NCBI RefSeq assembly: GCF_006345805.1
Contig: NW_021835539.1
Span: forward strand, 1 to 39,306
DNA from: Octopus sinensis
Lineage: Eukaryota
Direction: 5' to 3'
DNA length: 39,306 bases
The notes beneath the pieces are model-generated. The model was not told the origin of the DNA. It saw only the letters and a program-made list of their open reading frames with translations, and did not search any database. Below, one piece after another: positions 3,395-28,464 of this stretch. The first letter of the stretch is position 1; each line of letters begins with the position of its first letter. A program made the translations under genes and the position numbers.

Positions 3395-3550
3395 ATTAAT
3401 AAACCTATTGAAGGATTGGGACGAACTCCTTTAATGATTGCCTCTGAAGTGGGCGCCGATAGAAGAATCATCGACATTTTGATAGACGCAGGAAGCCAAA
3501 TCGGAGCGAAAGACTATTGGTTGTACAGCTTTGCATTGGGCTGTGTTTGG
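3395..3550 (+). CDS. Exon A, ankyrin repeats: INKPIEGLGRTPLMIASEVGADRRIIDILIDAGSQIGAKDY-x-GCTALHWAVFG (frameshift near 3518)
   Basis: Acceptor ttcttcattacag ends 3394; donor gtaagt at 3551. Ankyrin motifs GRTPLMIA and GCTALHWA lie in different frames. The second frame ends in phase 2, matching the next exon. Confidence 0.88.
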
Positions 3551-3756
3551 GTAAGTTGAGAATCAAGTAAAATCTGCAGATGTGTTTTTGTTTGTAAATT
3601 TGTTGCAATTGCAGACACAGGTTCAATATCCAAACAGGCCAGAGTTGTGGGACAACATCACAACAGCAGACTAGCAAACAACAACAACAACAACAACAAG
3701 CTTCTCTTTAGTCATCGATCCAAGTCATTAGTCATTATTCAATCATAACAATCCCG

Positions 3757-4616
3757 ATGATGATGATGATAACGGCGATGATGATGACGATGACGGTATT
3801 GATGATGTCGACCATCATGATGATGTTGTTGATGATGTTGATGATAATGATGGAGGTGGTGATGATGATGATGTCGATCATGATGATGGTGTTGTTGATG
3901 TTGTTGATGATGGAGGCGATGATGGTGATGATGATGATGATGATGATGATGATTATATGATGTCGCTGATGATGTTGATTATGATTATAGTGGCGACGAA
4001 TGATGATGAAGACGATGGTGGTGGCAATGAGGGGGATGATGACGATGATGATGATGATTATGATTATACTGATGATAATGATAACGACGATGATGAGGAT
4101 AACAACAATGATGATTATGATGATGTTGATGATGATGATGATAATGATAATGATGATGATGATGATAACGACGACGATGATGATGATGATTATGATGATG
4201 ACGATGATAACCCGATGATGAAGCTGATGAAGTGATGGTGTTGATGATGATGATGATCATGATAACGACGATGATGAAGATGATGATGATGTGATGGGAT
4301 GATGATGATTATGATGATGTGACGATAATGATGATGATGACGACCATGATGATGATGATGATGATAACGACGATGATGAAGATGATGTAGATGTTGATAA
4401 TAATGATGATGATGATGATGGTGATGATAATGATGATGATGATGATAATGATGATGTTGATGATGATGATGACGACGATGATTATTATGATGATTATCGT
4501 GATGATGACGATGATGATGATGATGATGATTATGATGTTATTATTATGATGATGATGATGATAATGATTATGATGTGATGTGATGATGAGGTTGATCTTG
4601 CTGTTGATGATGGTGT

Positions 4617-4649
<33 letters not shown>

Positions 4650-5090
4650 CGATGATGATGGTGATGATGATGATGATGATGATGATAATGATGATGATGA
4701 TGATGATGATATTGATTATGATGATATTGGAGATGTTGAAGATGATAATGATGATGATGGTGTTGGCAATGAGGGTGATGATGATGAAGGCTTTGATGAT
4801 GATGATGATGATGATTTTGTCAATGATGGAGGTGGTGGCAATGATGATGATGGTAATGATGTTGATGAACATATTGATGATAATAGTGCAGGTGATGAAG
4901 ATGGTGATGATGATGATGGCGATGATGATGATGGCGATGATGGCGATGATGATGATGGCGATGATGATGATGATGATTTTGTCAATGATGGAGGTGGTGG
5001 CAATGATGATGATGGTAATGATGTTGATGAACACGATATTGATGATAATAGTGCAGGTGATAATGATGATGATGATGATGACGATAATGT
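3757..5090. repeat. Degenerate (GAT)n trinucleotide tract
   Basis: ~1.3 kb of GAT/GAC/AAT/GTT variants; source of the poly-M/D/I/H ORFs in the track. Confidence 0.95.
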
Positions 5091-5159
5091 TTCGTCTCAA
5101 AGCCAAAATATTTTCATATTTAATGTAAATTAGTCAATGTTTCTATCTTTTACTCTCAG

Positions 5160-5205
5160 TGGTCGACCTCATCCTGTGGAGATCTTACTATCTCGGGGCA
5201 GTGAG
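5160..5205 (+). CDS. Exon B (46 nt), ankyrin second helix: (G)GRPHPVEILLSRGSE
   Basis: Acceptor tttactctcag ends 5159; donor gtaagt at 5206. Phase 2 in, phase 0 out; completes the repeat TALHWAVFG-GRPHPVEILLSRGSE. Confidence 0.85.
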
Positions 5206-5559
5206 GTAAGTATCTTATTTATATCCTTTCGTATGTTCTACTGAAGACGAAAGAATCTATTATGAGATTAATTTCGAAATTGATTCAATATAGAAATAAC
5301 GAACTTTTTAAAAAACATTCTATCGTCCGGCTTTCCCCGATTTCAGTTCTTCGTGTTTTTTTTTCTGTAGCGAGTAAATAATATGTGGAAATTGACGATT
5401 TAAAAGTCTCTTATCAGCAAATTGTCATTGAAATACTTTTCTTTAGCCCTTATTTATAAGTTGTTTATAATTTAACAGTAAAGTTATTTTAATATGCTGC
5501 CACATTTTTTGATGGAATATTTTTCTGTAAAAAAAACTTCATCCTATATTAGTATGTAT

Positions 5560-5591
<32 letters not shown>

Positions 5592-5822
5592 GCAAAAACT
5601 GTCTGATGAACGGCAACGAGAAACTCAGAGTAACAGATTTTGTTGAATTTTCTGCTGCTTTAAATAAAGTATATATATATATATATATATTAGTATATTA
5701 TATATATATATAATATATATATATATATACATACATACATATATATATATATAAATATGTATGCACACGTATATATGAGTATGTACACACACCCACACAC
5801 ACACACACACACACACACATAC

Positions 5823-5857
<35 letters not shown>

Positions 5858-6090
5858 CTTCTTGAGCCCCCGTATTTTCCCCCATATCTTTCTGGTGTTT
5901 TCTACTTTTTAATGATAATCATTGATTTTCGATGACGATTATGTTGAGAAAACGGAAGCATTTGATTAGTTTCAAGCCAATCACAACTCCAGACATAATT
6001 GTTGATTAAGACATTGAAAGGGATGGGTTTTCAGAAAATTTCATTAAGAAATGTTTATATTAAAAAGCTTCATGAGGAACATACAACAAC

Positions 6091-6137
<47 letters not shown>

Positions 6138-6140
<3 letters not shown>

Positions 6141-6540
6141 CACAAGAATGGCTGTGTGGTAAGTCGCTTGCTTACAAACCACATGGTTCCGGGTTCAGTC
6201 CCACTTGGACAAGTGTCTTGTACTTTAGCCTCGGGCCGACCAAAGCCTTGTGAGTGGATTTGGTAGACGGAAACTGGAAGAAGCCCGTCCTATATATGTA
6301 TATATATAATATTTATATATATATATTGTTGTGTGTTGAGTGTGCGTGTTTGTTACTCACCGTCGCTTGACAACCGATGCTGGTGTGTTACGCCCCCGTA
6401 ACTTAGCGGTTCGGCAAAGAGATCGATAGAATAAGTACTAGACTTACAAAGAATAAGTCCTGGTCGCAATTTCCTCGACTAAATGTGGTGCGCCATCATG
6501 GCCACAGTCAAATGATGGAAACAAGCAAAAGAGTAAAAAA
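6138..6540 (+). mobile_element. tRNA-derived SINE with internal (TA)/(TG) microsatellite (octopus OK/OR-type)
   Basis: A-box-like TGGCTGTGTGG and B-box-like GGTTCAGTCCC; body ...gtgagtggatttggtagacggaaactg...; 3' part cgcttgacaaccgatgctggtgtg...gaaacaagcaaaagag. Homologous copies at 6619, 8944 and 15311. Confidence 0.85.
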
Positions 6541-6571
6541 GATCTACTTACACACACACACACACACACAC

Positions 6572-6609
<38 letters not shown>

Positions 6610-6618
6610 AGTGAGAGA

Positions 6619-7105
6619 GTCGCAGGTGTGGCTGTGTGGTAAGTAACTTGCTTACCAACCACATGGTTCCCGGTTAATTTTCACTGCATGGCAAAATGTA
6701 CAAGTGTCTTCTGCTACAGCCCGGGCTGAGCAAAACTTGTGAGTGGATTTGGTAGATGGAGACTGAAAGAAGCCCGTCGTAGTATATATATATATAAATA
6801 TGTATAAATCTATATATATGTGTGTGTGTGTTGTGTGTGTTACATATATATATATATGCATATGAGTTTGTGTATGTGTGTGTGTGTTATGTGTGTCTGT
6901 GTGTACGTGCTGTGTTGTGTGTCGTGGGTTTGTCCCCCAACATCGCTTGACAACCGATGCTGGTGTGTTTACGTCCCCGTAAACTAGCATTTCTGCAAAA
7001 GAAATGAATAAAATAAGTACTAGGCTTACTGGGGTCGATTTGCTCGACTAACGACAGTGCTCCAGCATGGCCACATTCACATGACTGAAACAAATGAAAG
7101 AATAA
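6619..7105 (+). mobile_element. Second copy of the same tRNA-derived SINE, in tandem
   Basis: Same head (tggctgtgtggtaagt..cttgcttaccaaccacatggttcc), internal microsatellite and 3' domain as 6138-6540. Confidence 0.85.
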
Positions 7106-7469
7106 ATTAAAAATGTAACTTTGAACACACACACACGCAAACACACACACATATATACACACACACATATATACACACACACACATTTTGCTGCTATATG
7201 TGTTATTTATTGAGTTATTCATCTATATGCGTGTGTTGTGTGTGTGTGTTGTATAAATATATTATATGCACATATGTATGTGTGTATACGCGTGTGTGTA
7301 TATACAATAGAAATCTCCATTACCTACTCCCCACCCCAATCATTCCACCTGTTTAATTAATTTCATTCCTTCTCTTCTCTTTTCTCTGAGTTTTTCTTTT
7401 ATCTTCACCACCCGACTCCCCTTTCCTTTCAGACACCATTTTTAATGTTTTTATTCTTTTCTTTATCAG

Positions 7470-7624
7470 GTTAATCCACGAGATGAAGATGGTCGCACAC
7501 CGCTGCACTGGGCCTGTAATTGGGGACACTTGCACACTGTCGGCATGTTGTTGGGTCACAATGGCATCGATGCCAATGTTGTGGACAACAATGGAGACAC
7601 ACCACTGCATGAGGCAGTTCGGGG
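7470..7624 (+). CDS. Exon C, ankyrin repeats: VNPRDEDGRTPLHWACNWGHLHTVGMLLGHNGIDANVVDNNGDTPLHEAVRG
   Basis: Acceptor ttttctttatcag ends 7469; donor gtaagt at 7625. 155 nt open frame (phase 0 in, 2 out) with two TPLH motifs. Confidence 0.93.
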
Positions 7625-8177
7625 GTAAGTCCCCATTGGATCTGGAATATCCAAATCTGCTTCTTTTATGTTTTCAATAATGTTTGTTTCTTTTTCATTC
7701 AGTCATTCATGTCATAATCCCACCATGGGGTCATTGTCTTTCTTCTCTCTTTCGCACTGTAATCTACTTTATTAATTAATCATCACCGTAATTGTTATTG
7801 TTGTTGCCTGACTGGACACTTTACTTCATCTCGTTCTCCATTACCTCAACGTCACAGGTTCAAATCCTCTCTCTTCCTCTTTCATCCCATCTAGCACTAC
7901 TTTCTCTCTCTCTCTCTCTCACTCTCTCTTTCTTCCTCCTCTCTCTCTTTGTAGTTTCCCTATTTACTCCGACCCTGGGCTAAATACAGAATCATCCCCT
8001 TACAGTATTTACATTTGTCTTTATGTTCCATGTTCAAATCCTACCAGAATATTTACTATCACTCTGCGGTCAATATAATCTGTACCAGTAATACCCAGGG
8101 GTTCCTTTAATAAACTGTCTTCCTCTTTCTCCAGTTCTTGTTTCTTATTACTTTTGAAGAATAAAATTGTGTTATTT

Positions 8178-8305
8178 TATTTACGACTCTTTACGTTCAG
8201 AGTTCAAATCCTGCCAAGGTCAACTTCTCCTTCCATCTTTGCAAGGTTGATAAAATACAATACCAGTCATGTACTGGGGTTCATATGATTACCTGTAGCC
8301 CTTCT
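8178..8305 (+). mobile_element. Degenerate fragment of a second SINE family (same as 28922-29110)
   Basis: tttacgttcagagttcaaatcctgccaaggtcaact...gataaaatacaataccag...tactggggt resembles the reverse complement of 28990-29105. Confidence 0.55.
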
Positions 8306-8595
8306 TTCCTTCCTAAATTTCATGTTTATATAAGTTGTCAGAATTCTTAGCAGTATTTTTCCTGTCTTTACATTTCTGGGTTTACTCATGTGTGTATATA
8401 TCATTGTTCTACTGTGTAGAGTGTGTATTGAATAAATATATATGTGTGTGTGAGTATGTGTGTAATAATTGCTGTAATTAAGTTATTGTCACCTAATTAC
8501 ATTTGTTTTCTTTAATGACCTAATAACTATTATCTCAAGCTGTGTGATGTTTGTTTTTTTTTTCATGTTTTTCTTTCCACATCCATTACTTTCAG

Positions 8596-8632
8596 GCGAA
8601 AATATAAAGTGGTGTGTGCGATGCTGAAGCAG
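8596..8632 (+). CDS. Exon D (37 nt): (G)RKYKVVCAMLKQ
   Basis: Acceptor ccattactttcag ends 8595; donor gttagt at 8633. Phase 2 in, 0 out; supplies the second helix after TPLHEAVRG. Confidence 0.8.
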
Positions 8633-8943
8633 GTTAGTTAATAAATACATATTATATACACTCTCCAGTATTATATTGATCTGTATAATATAAATATTAT
8701 CAAGGTACCAGTGAAATAATAGCGATAGATTTAATCACATGTACTACAAAACCCTTGTGCTTGTGGAGGAATTGTATATTGATCATGTTGATGTTGATAT
8801 TAGCGGTGTTGACAGTCCAACTGACCACCATCACTGATAATAATATCTTTAATGGTCAAATGAAACTACGTCATTACGAGATGAACCAAAATATAACAGA
8901 CATCATGTGTATATATGTATATACATATATATATATATATATT

Positions 8944-9210
8944 AATTGTTTCAGGCATTTGACTGCGGTCATGCTGGGGCATCACCTTGTATTTTAGTCA
9001 AATGTATCGATCCAGTCCTTTCTTTTATTTAAGCCTATCACTTATCCTCTCAGCCTCTTACCGAACCGCTACACCACACACACACACAAATGCAAACACT
9101 AACTCACACACACACACATACATAGGCACACAATAGACACACACCTGTTATGAAGCTTCTTTCAGTTTTTCATTTCCCAAATCGCCTATAAAATTTGTTC
9201 AGCCCTAGGT
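8944..9210 (-). mobile_element. Degenerate, partial copy of the OK/OR-type SINE
   Basis: tgtttcaggcatttgactgcggtcatgctgg...cttctttcagtttt matches the minus-strand copy at 15311-15752. Confidence 0.6.
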
Positions 9211-9348
9211 AAGGGTAGAATAGAATATACTTGCCTGAGTTTCCCTGCAGAGGGATTCAACGTGGAAGAGTGTATGGCTGGGAAAAATGTTCCTTACACT
9301 ACACCATGTATATAGGATGTGTGTGTCTATCTATTCTTTCTTTTTCTA

Positions 9349-9349
<1 letters not shown>

Positions 9350-9379
<30 letters not shown>

Positions 9380-9655
9380 TTATCTATCTATCTATCTATC
9401 TATCTACTATCTATCTATCTATCTATCTATCTGTCTGTCTGTCTCTCTATCTCTCACTCTGTTTGTCTATCTATCTATCTCTCTCTCATCTATCTATCTG
9501 TCTACTATCTATCTATCTATCTATCTGTCTGTGTGTCTGTCTCTCTATCTCTCTCTCTGCCTATCTATCTATCTATCTATCTACCTATCTATCTATCTAT
9601 CTATCTATCATCTATCTATCTATCTATCTGTCTGTCTGTCTCTTATCTCTCTCTG

Positions 9656-9720
<65 letters not shown>

Positions 9721-9868
9721 TATTATCTATCTATCTGTCTGTCTGTCTGTCTCTCTATGTCTCTCTCTGTCTATCTATCTATCTTTCTATCTATCATTAT
9801 CTATCTATCTATCTATCTATCTATCATCTATCTATCATCTATCTACTATATTATATATATATATATAT

Positions 9869-9907
<39 letters not shown>

Positions 9908-9935
9908 CTATATATTATATATGTATATATACAGA
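9350..9935. repeat. Compound (CT)n/(TATC)n/(TGTC)n/(TA)n microsatellite
   Basis: Direct inspection; explains the YLSI-repeat ORFs at 9231-10061. Confidence 0.95.
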
Positions 9936-10796
9936 TCATCATCATCATCATACTTGCTTGGCCCGATAGATTATATTGAGGCAAATTTCCTGCAGCTGGA
10001 TGCTCCCCTATCGCCAACCTTCTCCTCTTCTTTCAAGGAAACAACATTTGCCAAGAACTAGACATGTTCCCGCAGAATGTTGGAAATAAGAGACCCTGCT
10101 TATATGACAGTGGCACTCATTTACAACTATACACAGATGTCAAGACAAAGAGACACTCACACACACACAAGCGTATACGCACTCACATATAAGATGAATA
10201 CTCATATATATATATATATACATACAACACAATGAAGTCTGTGTGTGTCTGTGCGTATATATATGTATGGATATATACATACATACACATATATATATAT
10301 GCAGATATATATATATATGTGTGTGTGTGGTGTGTGTGTGTCTATGCATTGGGATATGTATATATTATACGCACACACACACCACAATATATATATACAT
10401 ATAAAGTAAGAAATTATAAGATGAATATATTTCTTCACCAGTTACATCGTTTCACAGAAATTTTTGTGTATGATAAATTCTTTACATGTCTGCATTAGTG
10501 TATAGGTTATAAATCATACAGTGCCATCGTACAATTTACAAAGTAAAACAGGTATAAATGACAAGCACCTCAGTTCATAGAGTATCATGTTTACATCCAT
10601 TCTTCAATGCAATATACATATACAAGAACAGAATTTTATTTTCAAAATATTAATGTATGGAAGACAATAATTTACAAAACAGTTTTTTATAGAAGAGAGA
10701 AGGTGATTTAGTAAGATATCAAAAAGGAAGCAGTAAATATACATACATGCATATACATTATATATAACATATATATATATATATACTTATATATGA

Positions 10797-11323
10797 ATGT
10801 ATATAAAAAATTGGGGTGGTTTATGGGATTACCTGGGTTTCCCATCAATAAAGGGTTAGCTTTGTACCGTATCGAACCCCAAAACCTGTTGGCCTAAGAC
10901 CTCTTCAAAATATGGAAGGAAAAAGCTTGGATTTACGTTTTCTGCAAACGATCCTTTTCAGCTCCCTGGCAAGAGATTATCCCAGTGACCATGTGGTTTC
11001 TATTAAATACCTCACCATTGAAGCGTTTCTACATATTCACTGAAACAACGGGTCTCCCATAAATATTGAAAGAATTTGACCTCGGATACTCCAGCAATAA
11101 CATCCCCACGTCATCCAACGAACTATACACCCGTATGCAGCTGGAAAAGCTATTGGACGGGATTAGGCGTATGAGGTGAACGGCTTTTCCACCCTCCATA
11201 TTTGGAAGAGGTCTTAGGCCAACAGGTTTTGGGGTCTAATGATACGCCTGAAGCTAAATCCTTTTTGGACCGGAAACCAAGGGTAATCCGGAAACCGGCC
11301 TTCCCCAGTTTTAAAATATACAT
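10797..11323. mobile_element. MITE-like element with ~125 bp imperfect terminal inverted repeats
   Basis: 10877-10919 and the reverse complement of 11192-11234 match at 41/43 positions. Similarity extends outward to ATGTATAT..AAAATTGGGG / CCCCAGTTTTAAAATATACAT. No convincing transposase ORF inside. Confidence 0.75.
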
Positions 11324-11484
11324 GCTCTGCATCTTAGAGTGTGCTTCTTCTCCGAATTTATCTTTTCTACAATCAAAACATATATATACATAGATATGTC
11401 ATTATTCAGTTTATTTCAAGATACTTTATTTTCACTTTATGTCAACATCCGCTGCACAGCTAAACTATGCACAGTTTCTCTATG

Positions 11485-11563
11485 TATGTATGTTATGTAT
11501 GTATGTATGTATGTATGTATGTATGTATGTATGTATGTATGTATGTATGTATGTATGTATGTA

Positions 11564-11620
<57 letters not shown>
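11485..11620. repeat. (TATG)n-(TG)n microsatellite
   Basis: Direct inspection. Confidence 0.95.
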
Positions 11621-12114
11621 TTGCACGCACACACTCACACACGTTGTGATATAATTTTCACTTAGTCTACCTCAGGAATTTCACGGTTTTTTGAGTTTTA
11701 TTACAAATGGGGGATTGGGAAATGGAGTATTGACCCATTTTGCATCGGACACTTGTGGGTTGGATACTGTATAATTGGATGTGTTGCATCCTCCAGTGCA
11801 GATGCATCTCTTCTGGTGTCTTGTTTTACAGAAGAAACCTTACTAAATATTCTCGGTTTCGCTTGGCATGATGTTGCCAGGAGGTTGTTGGCTATAATGC
11901 TATAATCCAAGAACCTACTGACAACAACGACATACCAAGCGACACCGAGAACTTTCCCACCTGCAAGGAATCGATGCAACACGGGTCAAACCAATGGTTG
12001 TGATGGATAAATTTTCTCGTGAACTTCATTTTACATATTCCTCATTCAACATATATATTTATATATCCAACAGTAATGTATATAAATCTCTCCCTCTCTC
12101 TCTCTCTTCTCACT

Positions 12115-12169
<55 letters not shown>

Positions 12170-12601
12170 TTGACTGTGTCTCTGTGTATGTGTGTGTGCA
12201 CACGCATTAATTCATGGTGGTGGACACTAACCACCTCAACAGTTTTATGAACCTCTTATTAATTATAGCAACATCAAAAGTATACTTTAGAAATTTTGAT
12301 TCTTCTTTACTAGTCTTGATCTGTTAATCATGTGTTCACTCGTGTTCAGCTCCCCTAAAGCTTACTATAGTTAGGAAGAAAGGTAGATTAAGCTGAAACA
12401 ATCTATTTAGGACATCTTTATCCTGTCTAGAACACATTCTCATAGCAACATCTAGAGGATCTTACGAAGGTGATTTTACGGGCAAACATCAAATGTACAT
12501 GATCAGTTTGATCAAGTATACAGTAGAAGACAATAATGACACATTGATATCCATCCTGATTTTCATGTAAATTTTCATTTTCTATTTTTACTTCCACAAA
12601 G

Positions 12602-12810
12602 GGTTCAGTTCAGTTCGACATTCAAAACAAAAGGAAACGGACACCATTGCTTGAAGCCGTTTCCCAGGGTCACCTCGGAATGACACACAAGCTTATAGCC
12701 CTGGGTGCAAACATAAATGCTGTTGATGGTGAAGGTAACAGCTGTTTGCACCTGGCCGTGGAAAGAGAAGTGTTTGTTCCGAGGATGCACCCTTGGATTT
12801 ACTAAACGAA
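12602..12810 (+). CDS. Exon E, ankyrin repeats: GSVQFDIQNKRKRTPLLEAVSQGHLGMTHKLIALGANINAVDGEGNSCLHLAVEREVF-x-SEDAPLDLLNE (1-nt frameshift at 12776-12777)
   Basis: Acceptor cttccacaaag ends 12601; donor gtaagt at 12811. 209 nt. Adding 1 nt gives 70 codons, avoids TAA at 12803-12805 and gives the phase-0 exit required by the next exon. Confidence 0.87.
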
Positions 12811-13445
12811 GTAAGTTTTTAAATTGTTGTGTGTATATATATATTATATATATATATTGGTGTGTGTGTGTTCGTGTGTCTCTGTGTGTGTGTGTGAATT
12901 TGTGTATTTTGAGTCTTTGTGTGAGTGTGAGAAAGAGACAGACAAGCAGACAAACTTGGTTGTCATGTATCAATTCTCCCCTATCAACCCCATCCTCCAT
13001 TACCATTCCGTGATCCAGTCTCCCTTGTGACCCGAGTGATATTATGTAACAAACAATATTCCATCTCCTTTCACTCTCGAAGATGTCGTCTCACCACGGT
13101 CACGAGGTGACCCATCTCGGTTGTTGGCCCATATAAACACAGCCATCACAATGTGACGGGAGAAGTGGCCTATTTAAAAGAGGAGATATTATTCTCAATT
13201 AACAATGATGCAGGATAGAAGAGATGTCTGAGCTTTATAGTGCTGGTGCCATGGTAAATACATCCAGTCCATTCTATGAAGAATTCTGAGTGAAACTGCT
13301 CTCTATCCTACTTCTTGTACACGACATGAATCCACTGACTTCTTGTGGACATGTCATAACAATGTTCAATGTTAAAACACTAGAGAATGAATACAATAAA
13401 GCATGGTCCTTAGTGAGTTTTCCAGTATTTAAGTTCTGTACTTAG

Positions 13446-13484
<39 letters not shown>

Positions 13485-14424
13485 CACACTCACACACACA
13501 CAAACGCACACACTCACACAGACAAACACACAGAAGTAATGATTTTGAGTTTGAGTATATATCTTGTAAAATGCTGTTTAAAGCCCGTTTACTGTATTCG
13601 GCTATCCGATGTCATCAACAGTATGGACTTCAATACTACTGGACTTTTTGCTGTCATCTCATAAATGAAGCAGTTTTTTATAATTCTTATATTTTTCAAA
13701 ATTAAGATAAACAAAGTACTTTTTTCTGTTAATCTAAAACATATTCTCCTTCATTTTCTACAATGCCCTTCTGGTAGACTTGCAAGTCACTTCTTCCAAA
13801 ATTCACTTGTCCGTGATTAAAAATACTCCTCCATTACTCTTCTGACTTGACACTAATTCCTGCTTCCTTTACTTTACCGTCATCATTCAAAGATGCTTCT
13901 TGCTTAATTATGGAAACATTATTGATATGTTGGTTATGTCTGTGTGGTATTGACTTTGTTATGTTATAGGTGTTTTTGTTTCTGATATAACTTATGTTCT
14001 TTCTTCTCATGTTGTGTTATATTTATATATACAATACTCTTCTTATGGCCACATGCTCCTTTATCAAGCCAATTATATAGGTTGGTTCTTGTTGGTTTGT
14101 TCTTCCTATATTTGACTTTTCTATTGAATATATTGACAAGTAAATATTTACTCATTAATAAGCTTGATGTTAATCAATACAGTTTGTCCTGCTCAATGTA
14201 ATGACAATATATTTAGAGAGTGTCTCAGTGTTGAAAATAAAGTAAAAACATGAAAATGGGAAATGGACTCAATTAAAGAATATGTAGGAACTCAATACTT
14301 TGTAATTGCTTTAATTGGTGGATAAACAACCTATGAGTAAATTTAGATAAACTTTGTGTAATTAGGGGCATTTGTTTTAATATTTGTGTAATATTGTCAT
14401 CATTTTATATTTCATCATTTGTAG

Positions 14425-14597
14425 TGCTGCACTTCCCTTAACCTGAAAATAGAAGAAAGGCTCTCTGGTATAGTGGTTGCGAGATATCTCGCCAGCCAGG
14501 GAGCGGACTTTCACCATAAAACAACAAAATAACACACCATTGGACCTCATTAAGGACCCAAATTTGAGAAAAAATTAGAAGCATTTTTACCACCACA
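14425..14597 (+). CDS. Exon F, terminal ankyrin/cap: CCTSLNLKIEERLSGIVVARYLASQGADFHHK(NNKN)NTPLDLIKDPNLRKKLEAFLPP(Q); three apparent single-A deletions
   Basis: Acceptor catcatttgtag ends 14424; donor gtaagt at 14598. YLASQGAD...TPLDL matches the Mind bomb last-repeat pattern (FLAANGAD...SPLDL). Phase 0 in, 2 out. Confidence 0.85.
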
Positions 14598-15310
14598 GTA
14601 AGTATTTCCTGGCAATGGAACAGATAAACCAGTACATTTTCTATTTTGTATATAATCATATTTATATGTTTATTTCGTTTTAATTCTACCCATACATTAT
14701 ACTGTCGCTAGTGTTTTTGTCAAAGGCCACACAATAAACAATATGCAGTTCTCAGGAGATCAAAGAAAGAAAATGATTTTGATTACATTCACATGATTCG
14801 TAGTGTTGCCAGTTATACTTCACTGTTCACCCCCAACCTACCCCTCTTCGTTCCCTATTTTAAAGATTTGTGATCAATAGGAAAATATAGATCTAAATAA
14901 TGAAGTGAATGAATTCCATTTTGAGACTGTTACTTAGAAATAAGTGGAATTTATCTGTCTACCAACATCTTTTTCTCACTCTTCTAAGTCCGAATCAGTC
15001 AATATTAAGAATGATTTCATAGAAAAATAACCTACAAACACACACCAACAGTGTATATATTATATTTCTGCAAATACTGATGGAATATTGCCACATATCT
15101 TCATAGAAAAAAAAAACTGTCAGGAAACGTAAATAATTCAAGTAACACATATACCATTACTAGGTGTTTTAGTCGCCTTTGACTCCCGTATTTTATAAGA
15201 TTTGGCAATTTCTTTGCCATACATCTCTCTGTATTAGCTACTCAAGAAGCAGACACATTTGCCCCTCGGTGAATATACAAAACTTTCTTTGTCTGTTGAA
15301 ATTCAAATAT

Positions 15311-16603: not shown

Positions 16604-16605
<2 letters not shown>

Positions 16606-17161
16606 TGCCCTGATGCAGTACCAGGTTGTGGCTCTCATGGCTTCTGATCTTAAGTGATTGGAAGTGTTATCATGTACATTGTTTTGTCTTGGTATAAAAG
16701 ATGGGCTACAGCAAATATTCGGCTCAATACCACAGATTTGCTTGTCAGTTGTTTGACCTTAACCAGTTGAGCATGTCCCTTAGGTGGTGACAAAATGTGC
16801 ATCTCTGATCACGAGCAGAAGTAGTGGGGGAGCATCAAAGCCATGTGTTGAGAGGGACTTTTTGGGGTTTGGACAATTCACCTCTGGAAACATGGGTGTT
16901 TCGTTCAACATCCTTAAACAATCCTTATTCAGGGACCTTTTGAGCGGGATGGGCTAATCGGCCAGAAGAAAATTCTAGCTGGGCCTCACCTGCAAGGTCA
17001 TGCGCTGTTTATCTTGATATGAGATCACCATGTCGCGCACATATGTTTGTGATGCATGTGTCTGGTGTACCCTTATCAGACGGGTAGTCATGATGGGTAT
17101 ACTGGGCTTCGCATATTTATACCCCAGTGTTATTTTTATGGTATGCTCTGCTCTCTCACTC
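16604..17161 (+). mobile_element. Same ~550 bp (AAT)n-tailed repeat, copy 2
   Basis: Colinear with 16021-16570 from atgccctgatgcag to ctctctcactc; followed by (AAT)n then (AAG)n to ~17298. Confidence 0.7.
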
Positions 17162-17183
17162 AATAATAATAACAATAATAATA

Positions 17184-17271
<88 letters not shown>

Positions 17272-17299
17272 AAGAAGAAGAAGAAAAAGAAGAAGAAGT

Positions 17300-17765
17300 C
17301 TACAGAGCGCAGCTGATATTATTGGAAAGGGGCAAAATAAGGGAGAGAAAACTAGAACTACATGCACGATACATATAATAAAGCCTCCCAAAATCATGGT
17401 GGAAAATATCTCATCAGCATTGCCCAAATGATGTTGGCATCAGCTTTAAGATATACCCAAGGCCTGGGCCCCGCATTATCTGCCCACAACATAAATCAAA
17501 CTCGCATCACATAACAACAATACGGCAAAATTATTTCACCTCAAGTGGACCCACTCCATTTAGCATACATTAAAGCAGAAAAAGACCCCCATAAAGTTCA
17601 AGAAGTATTTGGAAAAATCCTTCAAGAAACCCCGGATAAAACTCCAACACCAGGATATGTCCCCGTAAACAGCAACTCTCTCCTCGAGTGGGTCATGTTG
17701 TCCGCATCCTGATTCGCCCGGTAGTGGGATTACGTTAAACATGACCTGCGCTAATACTGGCCGAA
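17300..17765 (+). mobile_element. Degenerate 3' fragment of a CR1/L2-group LINE ORF2
   Basis: Frameshifted translation ...TTIRQNYFTSSGP...IKFKKYLEK..LQETPDKTPTPGY resembles the FKxxLDxxLxxxPDxP C-terminal motif of this LINE group. Confidence 0.55.
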
Positions 17766-17781
17766 ACCTATGCATATACAT

Positions 17782-17842
<61 letters not shown>

Positions 17843-18574
17843 AGATATATCATCATCATCATCATCATCGTTTAACATCCGTTTTCCGTGGTAGCACGGG
17901 TTGCACGAAAATATACATAAGTAATATTTGTAGGCACGCCAACATGAGTATCTGTTCGAATGGACTCTACTGCGAATGTTTAACCCCAAGAGAACAACTC
18001 CTGTAAGTAATTAACGACGCAGAGGTGCATCCGATTAATTGCGAGCAGGGGATCGAACCCCTACCATCTTATAGCAACAGGACCAGCAGACCAGGTCTGG
18101 TTTCGGGCTATTCCTTCCACTGCTCAGTACTGGACACCTCATCTGCTAATCTGTGGAGACGGGATGTATATAATAAAGTGTATATAATAAAGTATGTGCA
18201 TATAAAGAAACCTGTGTAGATATATTTGTTCAGAAGAATTGAGTTCGATGTTAGAAGTGAAATATATTTCTGGAAGATATGTAGTTCACTGTGTGTCAAC
18301 CAATTTCTATGATGTATCAGGGTCAAGACAAACATTTATCAATGTATGTATGCATGTGTATGTATGTATGTATGTGTGTTTGTGAGCATGCCATTTAACT
18401 ACACACAATTCTGTATGTATGTAATTGTTTAAAGAAGAATTTCTGATATACTCTTGCTTGTCACTGGAGTGTCTCATAATATTCCCTACTCCAAACATGT
18501 ACATGATGTAATATTTCTAATATTTCTTATAAATGAATGTTATTGGTTTGATATGTTTCTATTTTGTTCCACAG

Positions 18575-18714
18575 GTGTTTGTGGTGCAAAAATAAAACGG
18601 CCACAATAAAATTTCTTCCATGCGGGCATTTTGTCACATGTGAAACATGTTCGAAAATCTCACTTAAACGATGTCTGAAGTGCGGGAAACCTGTAACGAG
18701 CAGAACTGGAGATG
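18575..18714 (+). CDS. Exon G, C3HC4 RING finger: (Q)CLWCKNKTATIKFLPCGHFVTCETCSKISLKRCLKCGKPVTSRTGD
   Basis: Acceptor ttttgttccacag ends 18574; donor gtaaga at 18715. All 8 ligands present in MIB/IAP-type spacing (CxxC..PCGH...CxxC..CxxC). Phase 2 in, 1 out. Confidence 0.93.
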
Positions 18715-19794: not shown

Positions 19795-19845
19795 AGAGTC
19801 CAAAGTTTGAAGAGAAGGGAGTGCAGACTGTGGCAGAGACAGTTG
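19795..19845 (+). pseudogene. Cassette A: shortened (51 nt) copy of the first death-domain exon, (E)SPKFEEKGVQTVAETV, donor mutated to AT
   Basis: Acceptor catatttcag; EEK and VA align with exon H (KKLEEKDLLKVAR). Followed by atgagt..aaaataa where exon H has gtgagt..aaaataa. Flanking intron DNA is homologous. Confidence 0.65.
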
Positions 19846-21199: not shown

Positions 21200-21271
21200 C
21201 GTCTCCAAAGTTTGCAGACAAGGGAGTGCAAATAGATTTACAATTATTAGAGCCTATATCCGAGCAAAGTG
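21200..21271 (+). pseudogene. Cassette B: 72-nt open-frame exon-like copy, (A)SPKFADKGVQIDLQLLEPISEQS, non-canonical donor (TTGAGT)
   Basis: Acceptor ttatttcag; same length and 1-1 phase as exon H; shares CCAAAGTTTG.AGA.AAGGGAGTGCA with 19795. Confidence 0.6.
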
Positions 21272-24129: not shown

Positions 24130-25268
24130 TCAAAGAAAACTTGTAATGTGACTAGTAGCGACCTCTTTTGAAAATGAACAAAATATGGCTTCGTGCAGAA
24201 AAAGGGTTTATTCCCCAAGGGCGATCATGCTGACACGGTTGCTATATTAGGTGATGACACTCCAACTTTATCAACTGTACAAAAGTGGACAGTGTAATTT
24301 AGGAGGCGAACTGAGAGTATTGAAAAGGACCCAATGTCTGGACGTCCTGCTACTTTCACCACCGAGGAAAACATTTAACATTTTTACCGCATGGTGATGG
24401 ATGACGGGTGATTGACTATAAATCAAATAGCCAATGGTATTAGCATTTTCGGTGACAGATTTGAGAATATTCTGCACTTGGCATGAGAATGGTTTCTGTT
24501 TGGTGGGTGCCACCGCTTCTGAGACCTGATCAAAAGCACACTAGGCTGATCATATTATTCTAAAATCCGACATTGCTTGAAGCAGACTCAGCTGAATTCC
24601 TTGAACCTTTCTTAAGCCACGATGAGTGTTGGATTAAACACTTTGAGCCTCAGACAAAAAGATAATCCATGCAGTAGAAACACACGTCTTTACCTGTTCC
24701 AAGGAAGGCCGACATCGTTTCATCTGCATGGAAGGGGATAGTCTCAGGTTTTTGTGATGCAAAAGGCATTGTGTTTATTGACTATTTTCAGAAGGGCTCA
24801 ACCATCGATGGAGGGTATTATACCATCTTACTGAAGCAGTTACAAAAGACTATCGAGACCAAATGCTCCGGGAAACTAATGCAAAGGGTTTCGTATCATC
24901 AAGACAATGACCCAGCACATACGTCATTGCCTTCAATGGCTGTTGATCATGGCCCTGGTTTTGAACTAGTTGATCACCTTACTTCTTCCCCCGATTTACC
25001 CCCTTCTAACTATTGTTTGTCCATCAACTTTCAAAATTACTCGGTTGGGAATCGTCGTCGCAGTGACGATGTCATCATATCTGCTGTTGCTGACCTTTTT
25101 TGAGCAACAGGATGAAAGCTTGTTCACGAATGGGATTCAAGAACTGAAATACCAACGGAAGGGTTGCGTGAACCTCAAGGGGGAGGTGTTGAAAAAAAAC
25201 CCTCAATTGCTCACATTCGTTGAGAGTATCTTTGTCAGACTATGAACTTTTCAGCCGACCATCATATG
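24130..25268 (+). mobile_element. Degenerate mariner (DD34D-type) transposon
   Basis: Motifs SGRP, WVPPLL, HDECW, HQDNDPAH and SPDLPPSNY. Right TIR-like end gactatgaacttttcagccgaccatcata at ~25238-25266. Multiple stops and frameshifts. Confidence 0.88.
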
Positions 25269-25487
25269 TAGGATGCCTTAATAAATAAAAGCGATTTAGG
25301 AAGATTAGCTGGATATTAAGCTATTGTATGGTACCGTTGTAAAACGTTTGAAAATGTTGGGCAAAACAGTTGCGGTCCCCATTTGGCCATTGATGATACG
25401 AATATCTTACGATAATAAAATATCGATTATTAATTAAGATTAAGGAATTTTACTAGAAAATGTAAAACATGGAAGAATTTATTTCAG

Positions 25488-25559
25488 ATACGAAAAAACT
25501 GGAGGAGAAGGATCTCCTGAAAGTGGCACGGCAATTGGGAAGCAAATGGTGGCAAGTGG
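25488..25559 (+). CDS. Exon H, death domain N-terminal part: (D)TKKLEEKDLLKVARQLGSKWWQV(G)
   Basis: Acceptor ttatttcag ends 25487; donor gtgagt at 25560. 72 nt, phase 1-1. The L..VA..LG..W..(G) pattern is typical of death-domain helices 1-2. Confidence 0.85.
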
Positions 25560-26099
25560 GTGAGTAGAAAATAATAATATCTAATTGATTTCTGTAAATG
25601 TTAGTTTTACTTAAAGCTTTTGTATGTCAGATTGACTGAGAACAGGTTCCATTCCTAATTTCCATTTGAAATGTTATATGTAAAATAATTCTATTAAATA
25701 TATTAATGTAATTTAATGAAAATGGGGTAAAATGGATAATTAATAATACACAATAGAATCGATTTTGTCTTTGGCAAGATGTGGACTAAAACAGGTTGTT
25801 CTTTAAGGGTAAACAGATGAGCTAATGACAATGTTTTTGTTTGTCTTACATTTTTACTAAGTTTACTGCTTGGTATTTGTAAGGAAGGGAAATTAATATC
25901 CAGAATAAGTCTTGTTTATTCCACCGTAAGAATTTGAGGCAGGTTCTTCTTAGGATCATTGTGTAAACAGCAGATAATTTCAGCTCATATAACAAATATT
26001 TGACGTCTTAATCACATGGCATATGTCTGTAGATGTTTTAACGAAAGACTAACTATAGAAAACTGATTAATCATATCATATTCTCTCTAGCCAAGAAGA

Positions 26100-27000
26100 T
26101 AGAATTTTTCTAAGAGAATTTAACAGAGAATGAATAGTCACAAGTCAAGCCAAACTGGAGGTGACCTCTCTCACTGAAACTGATATAATTATAACAGAAC
26201 AGACTCAGGAGAATTGATGGAATCTAGAGTTCATTGAGAATTGGTGAGAAGAATTATTTGGACAAGACTCAATTTGGATTGAATTTGACTCAGAATTATC
26301 GACTCTTGAAATATAACTGATCATTCGATTTTCAGTATCGTTTTGGGAATTTTGCAAGGTGATAGACTGCAAAGAGAGGCATTACTTCCATGAACTTTTG
26401 AATATCAGATTTGGGCATATTGAGGAGGCGGTTGATTCAATATATTCAACCTCATTCACTAAAGGATCATATTGGGACTGAACACAGCATTTCAAAAAAC
26501 AGGGCCTGGGTTACTCAACCAAGTTGGAATTGATGTCCCATCTATAGATTGTCCGGAATAATTGGACATTCTTCGATGGGTGGGGGTACATTAGATGCTG
26601 TACAAAACAGGAAACAGATTGAGTGAGGTCCATGTTTCACGTTTAATTTTTGGAGCGGCAAGCAAGTTCCATAGCTTTCCAAAGAAAACAATTGTATCTT
26701 TCACACTGTCCATTTATGGTGGGATCATACGCGCATGTCTTACTAGAGGCAACAATTTCAATAGGAAGCCATTTTTTACAAATCGTCTGACATGATGCAG
26801 CAGCCTGTATTTAAATACACATCGCTGGAATACAGAATATTGATAGTATACAACAAAGATGGTTGTTGAAATACTAATGTCTGTACATGGACGAACAACA
26901 GGACGTCTTCTAGAATATTCATCTACCACAGTAAAAATATATTCATTATGAGCAGCAGATGAAAGCAAACCAATAAAATGTCAATTAACTCACTGAAATG
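26100..27000 (-). mobile_element. Degenerate Ty3/Gypsy integrase fragment
   Basis: Minus-strand YIFTVVDEYSR, NGQCERYN and SIPTWLSNPGPVFLK..QYDPLVNEVE match Gypsy integrase core and C-terminus; frames are broken; no LTRs seen. Confidence 0.72.
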
Positions 27001-27599
27001 ATCGTGATGCTTATCCTGTCAAACTATATTTCTTTGAAAATGTCGATGAAGATGTCTTCGTTCGTCAGGATCTACTTTATCAATATAAAAGCCTCAAAGA
27101 TGAATTCGTCAGTTCTAAGCCACCATTATCTGTATATGGACTGTCAACACTATTACACCTTCTAAATTATTTAATAATTTATCAGTTGTTTAGTCAGGTA
27201 TCTGCCTTCATCTGGAAGACTTCAGATTGTTCCAAGTGTGACGTTTCTGTCTTTTACTTGGAAGCGTAAGACTGCATCATTAAATGTGTCCTTTTTCAGA
27301 TGTCACTACTTATCTTGAGTGACATATCGTGGCCTCTCCACCTCCCAGTGTTCATCTAGTTGAGGATCACACTTCACTCACCGGTAGATATTCGTGAGTC
27401 TTCTTTCCTGCGAACTAAAACTCTTCGTATGTTTACATTAAGAACTTTCCATAATCAGCTTCTCTCTAAATTGATGGCCTTGATCCAGTGAAATAAATTA
27501 TTATTATTATGCGTCATCCAGACAGAATACTTCTTCTATAATATGTGAGATGTACCTGACAGTATTATATTAATAATCCAAAGAAGGTAAGGCATCGCA

Positions 27600-27895
27600 C
27601 AAGACTATTTAAGCATTGGTCATGTTAAACTGCTACTTCTCTGCATTGAGTGGTCACAACTCCAGTATTACTGAGATGTGATGAGAATGTCAGAGGAAAG
27701 ATTCCTCAAACTGTGCCAACAGAGATAGACCCCAGGGTTAGACCAGTAATGAGATGGTCGGATTATAGTCATCGACTTTGCCGTTTATGCTTGGGAAGCC
27801 AACCAAAAAGTCTAATGACAATTGCTTCTGATAGGACTTTATGGAGGAAGTACTTGAGGGAATATCGTCAGGACCCCGCCAGGAATATTGAGCTG
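27600..27895 (+). mobile_element. RTE-clade (Rex3-like) LINE 3' fragment
   Basis: ORF 27650-27904 contains RP..RWSDY..RL..LG.....IASDRTLWR, resembling the RTE ORF C-terminus GRPRTRWRDY...VAxDRxVW. Confidence 0.55.
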
Positions 27896-28258
27896 AGAAA
27901 ATGAATGAGGAGATCAAATGGTTCGTTGGTGGTTTATGTTGATTCTTTAGGCTCTGATACACGTTTGCCTTTACAAACACTTCTCCTGCAATTTATTCAC
28001 CATAAATATTCTCAAGTGTAATTTTCGTTCGATCTTTGAAATTTGTTTCTCCGTCTTCAGCCTTTATTTCAACTTCTCTTATTTTTGTCAACATCCTTAG
28101 AAATAGAAAACAAAGTCTTATATTTTTCCTTTTTCTTAACTATTTCTTTAAGTCTCATATGCAGTTTCTTTGTTATATTTATAACAACCTACAGTACACG
28201 TCTTTCATATAATTGTTAATTTTTTGGCAATTATTTCTTATTCTTATATCTTTTGCAG

Positions 28259-28464
28259 GTATTTTCTTGGACATTAAAACTTCCGAGCTGGACATTATCA
28301 AGCGTGACAATAGTAATGACATTGTAGAACAGAGCTATCAGATGATGTACAAATGGTTCACAAGTTGTGAACCAAAGAAACGTACAGCTGAAACAATAAA
28401 TGCAGCTCTTGAAGAAGCTGAATGTTATAATGCCCTTCAATGTCTATCGTTGGACAAAAACTGA
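28259..28464 (+). CDS. Exon I (terminal), death domain C-terminal part: (G)IFLDIKTSELDIIKRDNSNDIVEQSYQMMYKWFTSCEPKKRTAETINAALEEAECYNALQCLSLDKN*
   Basis: Acceptor tatcttttgcag ends 28258, phase 1. LG/LD...ELD.I...N..D..EQ.YQM..KW....T...L..AL pattern of death domains; stop TGA at 28462-28464. Confidence 0.88.

What the first reader, a model, noticed from the sequence alone, without database searches (positions are those of the whole stretch)
3395..28464. Ankyrin-RING-death domain gene: a Mind bomb-like E3 module fused to a death domain
Seen: nine phase-compatible exons, mostly missed by the ORF track, encode ~6 ankyrin repeats, a complete C3HC4 RING and a terminal death-domain-like fold. Known: MIB1/MIB2 have ANK followed by 2-3 RINGs and no death domain; death domains mediate homotypic TNFR/TLR/apoptosis signalling, and MIB2 ubiquitylates RIPK1. 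Inference: this is a lineage-specific E3 ligase in which a death domain replaces the distal RINGs and could recruit it directly to death-domain adaptors, a candidate cephalopod innate-immune or cell-death regulator family. I cannot confirm novelty without a search.
Basis: partly seen in the sequence, partly recalled or inferred. Interest (0 to 1): 0.78.

Follow-up and report, generated by a model that had tools for sequence, protein, structure and literature searches.

The report
Broken octopus ankyrin-RING-death domain gene
The window holds one copy, disabled as sequenced, of a large gene family found so far only in octopuses, whose intact members join ankyrin repeats, one Mind-bomb-type RING finger and a death domain and are probably ubiquitin ligases that dock onto death-domain signalling complexes.

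Summary
The domains are real. Nine GT-AG exons on the + strand (3371-28464) encode six ankyrin repeats plus a cap, a complete C3HC4 RING (Pfam zf-C3HC4_3, 40 bits) and a death domain (Pfam Death, 33.6 bits). The predicted death-domain structure has pLDDT above 90, and the top 35 Foldseek matches are all death domains.

The exons are not cleanly phase-compatible. Compared with a close O. sinensis paralogue, exons 1, 5 and 6 carry five small deletions (6 nt in all). Read literally, the ORF stops after 74 codons. Two optional linker exons also have mutated splice donors. This copy is most likely a young pseudogene; uncorrected assembly indels are the alternative.

The architecture is not unique to this locus. 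Of 103 related predicted proteins from Octopus sinensis, O. vulgaris and O. bimaculoides ("MIB2-like"), 41 have a canonical RING plus a near-full death domain and 17 more have the death domain. A profile search of 1.84 billion proteins found RING plus death domain only in Octopus. The ankyrin-to-RING part is collinear with Mind bomb, but the Mind bomb N-terminal domains and distal RINGs are absent.

I found no paper describing the family. E3 activity and an immune role are inferred, not shown.

The parts
3371..3550 (+). Exon 1: ATG start, ANK repeat 1 and the first half of repeat 2. Two nucleotides are missing between 3517 and 3519 (frame 2 to frame 3).
   Evidence: tblastn to P0003/P0019 gives 82-86% identity from residue 1. 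The frame switch is seen.
5160..5205 (+). Exon 2: second helix of ANK repeat 2 (RPHPVEILLSRGSE). This is the short exon form, as in P0019.
   Evidence: tblastn; AG/GTAAGT borders. L001 has the long form with one extra ANK repeat.
7470..7624 (+). Exon 3: ANK repeat 3 and the start of repeat 4. Intact.
   Evidence: 87% identity to P0009; no indel against L001.
8596..8632 (+). Exon 4: RKYKVVCAMLKQ, a helix of ANK repeat 4. Intact.
   Evidence: tblastn to P0003/P0019; borders.
12602..12810 (+). Exon 5: ANK repeat 5 and the start of repeat 6. One A is missing between 12776 and 12777 (TTTG[A]TTCC), which leads to a stop at 12803.
   Evidence: DNA alignment to L001, 96% identity with one gap; frames.
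14425..14597 (+). Exon 6: end of ANK repeat 6 and the Mind-bomb-like capping repeat (GADFHHKN..NTPLDLIKDPNLRKKLEAF). There are three 1-nt deletions in the A-runs 14518-14521, 14526-14529 and 14569-14574.
   Evidence: DNA alignment to L001, 98% identity with three gaps; in-frame stops in the literal reading.
18575..18714 (+). Exon 7: complete C3HC4 RING (CLWC...CGH...C..C...CLKC). Intact.
   Evidence: Pfam zf-C3HC4_3 at 40 bits. Seven Cys ligands are invariant in the family alignment. 92-95% identity to P0007/P0042.
19795..19845 (+). Linker cassette exon A (SPKFEEKGVQTVAETV) with a dead donor: ATGAGT instead of GTAAGT.
   Evidence: tblastn to P0002/P0047; alignment with the live exon of L002.
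21200..21271 (+). Linker cassette exon B (SPKFADKGVQIDLQLLEPISEQS) with a dead donor: TTGAGT instead of GTGAGT.
   Evidence: tblastn to P0009/P0044; alignment with L002.
25488..25559 (+). Exon 8: first helix of the death domain (TKKLEEKDLLKVARQLGSKWWQVG). Intact.
   Evidence: 72% identity to P0002. An intact paralogue, L002, has the same split of the death domain.
28259..28464 (+). Exon 9: the rest of the death domain, with stop codon TGA at 28462-28464. Intact.
   Evidence: 91% identity to P0002; Pfam Death on exons 8+9; AF2 and Foldseek.
13581..13661 (+). Alternative terminal exon inside intron 5. In paralogues it gives ANK-only isoforms.
   Evidence: 96% identity over 27 aa to the C-terminus of P0059.

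Best explanation
The locus is one member of an Octopus-restricted, many-copy gene family. Its proteins consist of six ankyrin repeats plus a cap, a single RING-HC finger, a variable linker built from optional cassette exons, and a C-terminal death domain.

The ANK-to-RING part descends from the ANK-RING1 segment of a Mind bomb-type E3 ligase. The death domain is of the RIPK1/ankyrin/PIDD type.

This copy is disabled as sequenced. Five small deletions in exons 1, 5 and 6 stop the ORF after 74 codons, and both linker cassette exons have lost the G of their splice donor. It is most likely a recently decayed pseudogene in a birth-and-death family whose exons are exchanged between paralogues.

For intact members I infer the following mechanism; none of it is shown. 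The death domain docks or polymerises on death-domain assemblies. This brings the RINGs together and activates E2~ubiquitin transfer. The ankyrin stack selects the substrate or partner.
For: Shown:
- Domains are confirmed by Pfam. The PDB profile search finds RIPK1 DD at 3e-10, then ankyrin and PIDD DDs, and cIAP/XIAP RINGs. The death-domain fold is confirmed.
- 103 Octopus relatives were found, the best at 54% full-length identity. 41 have a canonical RING plus a full death domain and 17 more have the death domain.
- RING plus death domain was found only in Octopus among the 150 best of 1762 hits in 1.84e9 representatives. All 23 family-type representatives looked up were Octopus.
- The alignment with a genuine Mind bomb is collinear.
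- The intact paralogue L002 has the same RING / cassette / DD1 / DD2 exon layout.
- The deletions are seen against L001 and the literal ORF is 74 aa.
- The dead donors are substitutions, not indels.
- Two 95%-identical TE copies in the same window show no indel across a 693-nt ORF, which argues against a uniformly indel-ridden assembly.
- O. vulgaris models P0042 and P0102 contain frame-shifted stretches, so decayed copies appear to exist in another assembly too.
- Different exons have different nearest paralogues.
Against: - Three of the five deletions lie in A-runs within 60 nt of an exon that is otherwise 98% identical to L001.
- In the block 10467-15874 the window lacks 24 single bases against 5 lacking in L001. 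This pattern is typical of long-read consensus errors.
- After repair there is no nonsense substitution in 407 codons.
- No reads or RNA-seq could be consulted.
- E3 activity is untested. The RING corresponds by position to Mind bomb RING1 and is internal rather than C-terminal, and one subfamily replaces the His ligand with Asp.
- No death-domain partner is known.
Confidence: 0.6

Rival explanations
1. The gene is intact in the animal, and the five deletions are uncorrected consensus errors of a long-read assembly in a multi-copy region where short-read polishing fails. The locus would then encode a working 407-aa ANK-RING-DD protein.
For: - All five lesions are deletions.
- Three are in A5-A7 homopolymers in one exon.
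- In the same block, single-base gaps are 24 in the window against 5 in L001, and 5 of 26 long homopolymers are shortened in the window.
- All splice sites of the nine exons are canonical, and the repaired ORF has no stop.
Against: - The 2-nt loss in exon 1 and the A lost from TTTGATTCC in exon 5 are not homopolymer events.
- The other aligned blocks show no excess of deletions and no shortened homopolymers.
- Two TE ORFs of 693 nt in the window are indel-free relative to each other.
- Both cassette exons carry substitutions at donor +1.
- No annotated protein corresponds to this locus, although more than 100 paralogues are annotated.
Confidence: 0.3
2. Family members are not ligases. They would be death-domain adaptors or decoys in which the RING is only a structural zinc module, and ANK-only, RING-less and helix-1-less isoforms would act as dominant negatives.
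For: - By position the RING matches Mind bomb RING1.
- One subfamily has CGD instead of CGH.
- Many annotated isoforms lack the RING or part of the death domain.
- An alternative terminal exon gives ANK-only products.
Against: - Seven Cys ligands are invariant, and the hydrophobic residue in the first C-x-x-C is kept across 17 diverse members.
- Pfam zf-C3HC4_3 scores above the cut-off in most members.
- The nearest solved RINGs are the active cIAP and XIAP RINGs.
Confidence: 0.2
3. The ANK exons and the RING/death-domain exons belong to different transcription units, for example neighbouring partial copies, so no single ANK-RING-DD transcript ever existed here.
For: - No transcript data are available for this locus.
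- Different exons have different nearest paralogues.
- The introns are long and full of transposon remnants.
Against: - Exon order, strand and junction phases are the same as in full-length paralogue models (P0001, P0002, P0019, P0026) and in the intact locus L002.
- There is only one copy of each exon type in 39 kb.
Confidence: 0.05

Closest known systems
Mind bomb E3 ligases (MIB1/MIB2)
   Same: - The ankyrin stack ends in the same capping repeat (GAD..KN....PLDL..D.NL) and is followed directly by a zf-C3HC4_3 RING.
- The alignment with a Mind bomb protein carrying the Pfam Mind bomb SH3 repeat is collinear.
- The best RING-only hits outside the family are MIB proteins.
   Different: - There is no MIB/HERC2, ZZ or SH3-repeat N-terminus.
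- There are about 6 rather than about 9 ankyrin repeats.
- There is one RING instead of two or three.
- A death domain stands in place of the coiled coil and the distal RINGs.
IAP ligases with a death-fold domain: vertebrate cIAP1/2 (BIR-UBA-CARD-RING) and oyster BIR-DD-RING IAPs (PMC8917759)
   Same: - The RING is of the same subtype. cIAP1/2 and XIAP are the nearest solved RINGs.
- A death-fold domain and a RING sit in one chain.
- The oyster IAP family is also expanded in a lineage-specific way in molluscs.
   Different: - There are no BIR domains; ankyrin repeats take their place.
- The domain order is RING then death domain, not death-fold then C-terminal RING.
- The domain is a true death domain rather than a CARD.
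Death domains of RIPK1, ankyrin-B/G and PIDD1
   Same: These give the best sequence matches (3e-10 to 4e-8) and the best fold matches (TM 0.7-0.84 normalised by target length).
   Different: The host proteins are a kinase, ZU5-UPA cytoskeletal adaptors and an LRR-ZU5 protein. None carries a RING.
Automatically annotated Octopus paralogues, e.g. O. sinensis 'E3 ubiquitin-protein ligase MIB2-like isoform X3' (P0002) and the 'MIB1-like' gene on CM016885.1 (P0026/L002)
   Same: - The architecture and exon layout are the same.
- The death-domain exon is 91% identical to P0002.
   Different: Those models have open reading frames. The window's copy has five deletions and dead cassette donors.

Membership tests
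Mind bomb (MIB1/MIB2) E3 ligases | N-terminal MIB/HERC2-ZZ-MIB/HERC2 module and SH3-type REP repeats | tested here: not met
   Pfam finds only Ank, zf-C3HC4_3 and Death in the repaired protein and in six full-length paralogues. The Mind bomb control P0204 does hit SH3_15. The ORF starts at the ATG in ANK repeat 1.
Mind bomb (MIB1/MIB2) E3 ligases | Ankyrin region followed directly by RING1 | tested here: met
   Collinear BLASTP alignment with P0204 through the last ANK into RING1, E 7e-29.
Mind bomb (MIB1/MIB2) E3 ligases | Two or three C-terminal RINGs | tested here: not met
   All 41 proteins with a canonical RING plus a death domain have exactly one RING motif. The window has one RING exon.
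Death domain (Pfam PF00531) | Profile match above the curated cut-off | tested here: met
   33.6 bits against a cut-off of 22.6 on exons 8+9; 29.2 bits on the whole protein.
Death domain (Pfam PF00531) | Death-domain helical bundle fold | tested here: met
   The AF2 model has pLDDT 88-97 over residues 50-130, and DSSP calls five helices there. The top 35 Foldseek PDB hits are all death domains, probability 0.98-1.00.
Death domain (Pfam PF00531) | Homotypic death-domain binding | not testable with these tools
   Needs pull-down or co-assembly experiments.
RING-HC (zf-C3HC4_3) E3 ligases | Eight zinc ligands with C3HC4 spacing | tested here: met
   The RING reads CLWC-x11-CGH-x3-C-x2-C-x7-C-x2-C. 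Pfam scores 40 bits against a cut-off of 27. The Cys ligands are invariant in the family alignment.
RING-HC (zf-C3HC4_3) E3 ligases | E2-dependent ubiquitin transfer | not testable with these tools
   Biochemical assay required.
Octopus ANK-RING-DD family | Same exon order and death domain split into the same two exons | tested here: met
   tblastn of paralogues onto the window; intact locus L002.
Octopus ANK-RING-DD family | Open reading frame through all exons (functional member) | tested here: not met
   Five deletions; the literal ORF is 74 aa. Whether the deletions are real could not be tested without reads.
IAP family | At least one BIR domain | tested here: not met
   No BIR hit in Pfam.
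Ankyrin / ANK-ZU5-UPA-DD proteins | ZU5-UPA module before the death domain | tested here: not met
   No ZU5 or UPA hit in Pfam. A RING and linker precede the death domain.

The most novel reading that the evidence does not exclude
Octopuses have built a private, combinatorially diversified repertoire of death-domain-targeted RING ligases. There are dozens of tandem ANK-RING-DD genes whose ANK, RING and death-domain exons are swapped between copies, and whose exons differ far more than the flanking introns. The repertoire would serve as a variable innate-immune or cell-death sensor and effector system, comparable in logic to TRIM or NLR expansions. The window would be one recently discarded copy.
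Probability: 0.25. Interest if true: 0.7.

Novelty: new variant of a known kind. Interest (0 to 1): 0.42.

Why it matters
Cephalopods have no adaptive immunity, and their innate repertoire is poorly charted. One survey notes that motile cephalopods have few or no expanded TRADD-N families, unlike bivalves or amphioxus (PMC8195603).

A family of dozens of genes that is apparently confined to Octopus would be a concrete candidate for lineage-specific regulation of MyD88-, RIPK1- or FADD-type complexes. It welds a Mind-bomb-type ANK-RING unit to a RIPK1-like death domain. It would also be a clean natural example of module shuffling in a tandem gene family.

For genome annotation, the family is currently mislabelled under a dozen unrelated names, including MIB1/2-like, ankyrin-3-like, PSMD10-like, EHMT1-like and PP6 ankyrin subunit-like.

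The single locus in this window adds little by itself, because it is probably dead.

Tried and rejected
- The candidate exon at 17545-17709 (+) has no Pfam hit and no paralogue match, so it is not part of the gene.
- I looked for the window's own protein in the 5.8-billion-protein collection. No hit exceeds 94% identity on any exon, so the locus is unannotated there.
- Genomic loci for P0042, P0002 and P0019 are not on record. L001 and L002 were used instead.
- I asked whether the exon 6 deletions could be compensatory, with the frame kept under selection. They are not, because stops arise in every intermediate frame.
- I asked whether positive selection explains why exons are more diverged than introns. 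dN/dS is about 0.47 and dS is also inflated (0.16 overall, 0.53 in the RING exon). Exon-sized conversion or shuffling therefore fits better.
- A PDB sequence search with the whole protein was swamped by generic ankyrin proteins and is not diagnostic.
- Seven literature searches found no description of the family. The one octopus 'MIB1' hit is the genuine Mind bomb orthologue.
- The species and assembly of the window could not be established. Its nearest relatives are O. sinensis and O. vulgaris sequences.


Full report
**What is in the sequence**

The window is eukaryotic DNA rich in transposon remnants and microsatellites. On the + strand, six-frame inspection and tblastn with related proteins define nine exons with canonical AG/GT borders: 3371-3550, 5160-5205, 7470-7624, 8596-8632, 12602-12810, 14425-14597, 18575-18714, 25488-25559 and 28259-28464. 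The gene starts at the ATG at 3371, not at 3395. Two full-length relatives, P0003 and P0019, begin with the same MSSLSSLQINKP.

Pfam finds three domain types in the exon peptides:
- Ank, 105 bits in 6 stretches.
- zf-C3HC4_3, 40 bits against a cut-off of 27.
- Death, 33.6 bits against a cut-off of 22.6.

By my reading of the repaired protein there are six ankyrin repeats plus a C-terminal capping half-repeat. The RING has all eight ligands (C-x2-C-x11-C-x-H-x3-C-x2-C-x7-C-x2-C).

An AlphaFold2 model of RING plus death domain, built with 17 family sequences, gives pLDDT 88-97 over residues 50-130. DSSP calls five helices in that stretch. The top 35 Foldseek matches in the PDB are all death domains, including ankyrin-G, TRADD, PIDD, FADD and RIPK1, with TM scores of 0.7-0.84 normalised by target length.

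The exons are phase-compatible only after repair. A 38.6-kb O. sinensis scaffold (L001, VCDQ01005699.1) is collinear with the window through introns, at 84-94% identity. Against it and against family proteins the window lacks:
- 2 nt in exon 1, between 3517 and 3519.
- One A in exon 5 (TTTG[A]TTCC, at 12776/12777).
- One A in each of three A-runs of exon 6 (14518-14521, 14526-14529, 14569-14574).

The literal spliced CDS is 1218 nt, and the ATG frame stops after 74 codons. With placeholders at the five sites it reads as a 407-aa ANK-RING-DD protein without any stop.

Two further exons encode the family's optional linker repeats (SPKF-E/A-DKGVQT...), at 19795-19845 and 21200-21271. Their splice donors are mutated at +1 (ATGAGT and TTGAGT). 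The intact paralogue L002 has GTAAGT and GTGAGT at the same positions.

**Pseudogene or assembly error?**

For error:
- All five lesions are deletions.
- Three sit in A5-A7 runs within 60 nt of an exon that is otherwise 98% identical to L001.
- In the block 10467-15874 the window lacks 24 single bases against 5 in L001, and 5 of 26 long homopolymers are shortened.

For real decay:
- The exon 1 and exon 5 lesions are not homopolymer events.
- The other aligned blocks show no excess of deletions.
- Two 95%-identical transposon copies in the window (29123-29914 and 38520-39306) have no indel across their 693-nt ORFs.
- The two dead cassette donors are substitutions.
- No annotated protein corresponds to this locus, although more than 100 paralogues are annotated.
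- O. vulgaris models contain stretches equal to out-of-frame translations of these exons (P0042: RETCNEQNWRW; P0102: TTMETHHCM). Frame-shifted copies therefore appear to exist in another assembly as well.

I put real decay at about 0.6 to 0.65 and assembly error at about 0.3. Only reads can settle it.

**The family**

A search of 5.8 billion proteins returned 103 Octopus sinensis, O. vulgaris and O. bimaculoides proteins before the first unrelated ankyrin protein. The best covers 99% of the query at 54% identity. They carry a dozen different automatic names, including MIB2-like, MIB1-like, ankyrin-3-like, PSMD10-like, EHMT1-like and PP6 ankyrin subunit-like. The breakdown is as follows:
- 41 have a canonical RING plus a near-full death domain.
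- 17 have the death domain with no canonical RING match. Most of these have a CGD variant RING in which Asp replaces the His ligand.
- 19 have a RING only.
- 26 have ankyrin repeats only. Many of these are isoforms or fragments.

The O. sinensis hits lie on about 40 scaffolds of different length, by my count from the tables. This points to dozens of loci.

The intact paralogue L002, on chromosome record CM016885.1, has the same 3' layout: RING exon, two cassette exons, and a death domain split at the same point (...WQQLG|RELRIK...). The join of the RING exon to the two death-domain exons is thus the family norm in annotated models. It could not be tested for this locus itself.

**Distribution**

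I searched a profile of RING plus death domain (alignment A1) against 1.84 billion cluster representatives with full HMMER. It gave 1762 hits, 134 of them at or below 1e-10. Among the 150 best, every protein with both a RING and a death domain is an Octopus protein, and all 23 family-type representatives I looked up are from that genus.

The next-best death-domain hits are multi-death-domain proteins of starfish, amphioxus, a coral and a cod. The next-best RING-only hits are Mind bomb proteins.

Two caveats apply. Only the top 150 are listed, so a very diverged RING-DD protein scoring below about 57 bits would be missed. I also do not know how well other cephalopods are represented in the library.

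**Relation to Mind bomb**

P0204 carries the Pfam Mind bomb SH3 repeat, ankyrin repeats and three zf-C3HC4_3 RINGs. It aligns collinearly with the repaired protein, from the ankyrin stack through the capping repeat (VARYLASQGADFHHKN..NTPLDLIKDPNL against IAKELLANGADLTIRNKKQKVPLDLCLDSNL) into RING1, at E 7e-29.

The family has no MIB/HERC2, ZZ or SH3-repeat domains and only one RING. It is therefore a derivative of the ANK-RING1 segment, not a Mind bomb family member. 'A death domain in place of the distal RINGs' is a fair description, but the N-terminal substrate-binding half of Mind bomb is missing as well.

Among solved structures, the family profile matches the RIPK1 death domain best (3.4e-10), then the ankyrin-B/G and PIDD death domains. 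Its RING matches cIAP1/2, CGRRF1 and XIAP.

**How it probably works (inference)**

Established behaviour of the parts suggests a mechanism for intact members. Death domains form homotypic helical assemblies, RING-HC domains of the IAP/Mind bomb type recruit E2~Ub and are activated by proximity or dimerisation, and ankyrin stacks bind partners. The most economical reading is a ligase that is recruited to, or polymerises on, a death-domain platform, with the ankyrin stack choosing the substrate.

The closest functional analogues are cIAP1/2 (CARD plus RING) and the oyster BIR-DD-RING IAPs (PMC8917759). Nothing here shows E3 activity, a partner or an immune role. An adaptor or decoy role is a live alternative, especially for the RING-variant and truncated isoforms.

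**An unexpected feature**

Between the window and L001, exons are much more diverged than their own flanking introns. Exons show 99/932 mismatches (10.6%) and the 200-nt flanks show 93/2420 (3.8%), Fisher p 9e-13. The contrast is extreme for three exons:

| Exon | Exon mismatch | Flank mismatch |
|---|---|---|
| Exon 1 | 14.1% | 1.5% |
| Exon 4 | 24.3% | 2.8% |
| Exon 7 (RING) | 23.6% | 6.5% |

Synonymous divergence is inflated too (dS 0.16 overall, 0.53 in the RING exon; dN/dS about 0.47). This is therefore not simply positive selection. It fits exon-sized conversion or shuffling, or homogenisation of introns alone.

Family-wide, RING identity and death-domain identity are almost uncorrelated (r 0.23 over 1081 pairs). 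There are 34 pairs with nearly identical RINGs and unrelated death domains, and 63 pairs with the converse. The window itself is a mosaic:
- Exons 1-2 are nearest P0019.
- Exons 3-6 are nearest the L001 type.
- The RING is nearest P0007/P0042.
- The death domain is nearest P0002/P0023.

Chimeric gene models across tandem copies could contribute to the family-wide pattern and need checking.

**Novelty and verdict**

Seven full-text searches found no paper describing an octopus ANK-RING-DD family. The proteins are nevertheless already in public databases as automatic predictions.

Lineage-specific expansions of death-domain and RING proteins are well known in marine invertebrates. I therefore rate this as a new variant of a known kind: a new arrangement of familiar domains, apparently private to Octopus.

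The locus in this window is a probably dead copy, which lowers its own value. The family-level lead, and the exon-versus-intron divergence pattern, are the parts worth following.

Noticed in passing
window 3371-18714 versus L001: Exons are about three times more diverged than their 200-nt flanking introns (10.6% against 3.8%, p 9e-13). Synonymous sites are affected too (RING exon dS 0.53). Across the family, RING and death-domain identities are nearly uncorrelated. This suggests exon-sized conversion or shuffling between paralogues.
   Followed up: partly
window 19795-19845 and 21200-21271: Two linker cassette exons have intact acceptors and reading frames, but the donor +1 G is mutated (ATGAGT, TTGAGT). 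An intact paralogue has GTAAGT and GTGAGT.
   Followed up: yes
window 13581-13661 (+): A stretch inside intron 5 is 96% identical over 27 aa to the C-terminus of an ANK-only O. sinensis model (P0059). It is probably an alternative terminal exon giving proteins without the RING and death domain.
   Followed up: no
window 1-3370: A purine-rich (AG/AAG-type) low-complexity tract of more than 3 kb lies directly upstream of the start codon, with GC skew about +0.8. Its last roughly 530 nt are conserved in the paralogue L001.
   Followed up: no
window 24678-25100 (+): A mariner-type DDE transposase remnant (Pfam Transposase_1, 29 bits) lies in the intron between the RING exon and the first death-domain exon.
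   Followed up: partly
window 29123-29914 and 38520-39306 (-), also 29963-30343 and 37250-37612 (-): Two 95%-identical copies of a retroelement tail each carry an open 230-aa ORF. Nearby fragments give sub-threshold RVT_1 hits (23 bits). A copy is also present in L001 at 89% identity.
   Followed up: partly
window 15984-16606 / 16571-17196: A tandem duplication of about 620 nt at 91% identity lies in the intron before the RING exon.
   Followed up: no
P0042 and P0102 (O. vulgaris models): These annotated proteins contain stretches identical to out-of-frame translations of the window's RING exon (RETCNEQNWRW) and exon 3 (TTMETHHCM). Those gene models appear to run through frame-shifted copies.
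   Followed up: partly
Family alignment (P0014, P0015, P0020, P0050, P0056, P0065 and others): One subfamily has Asp in place of the RING histidine ligand (PCGD instead of PCGH), with all cysteines kept.
   Followed up: no
L001 519-728: Exon 1 of the annotated paralogue is itself frame-shifted and has an in-frame stop. The RefSeq model (P0009) starts instead at a Met inside the long form of exon 2.
   Followed up: partly
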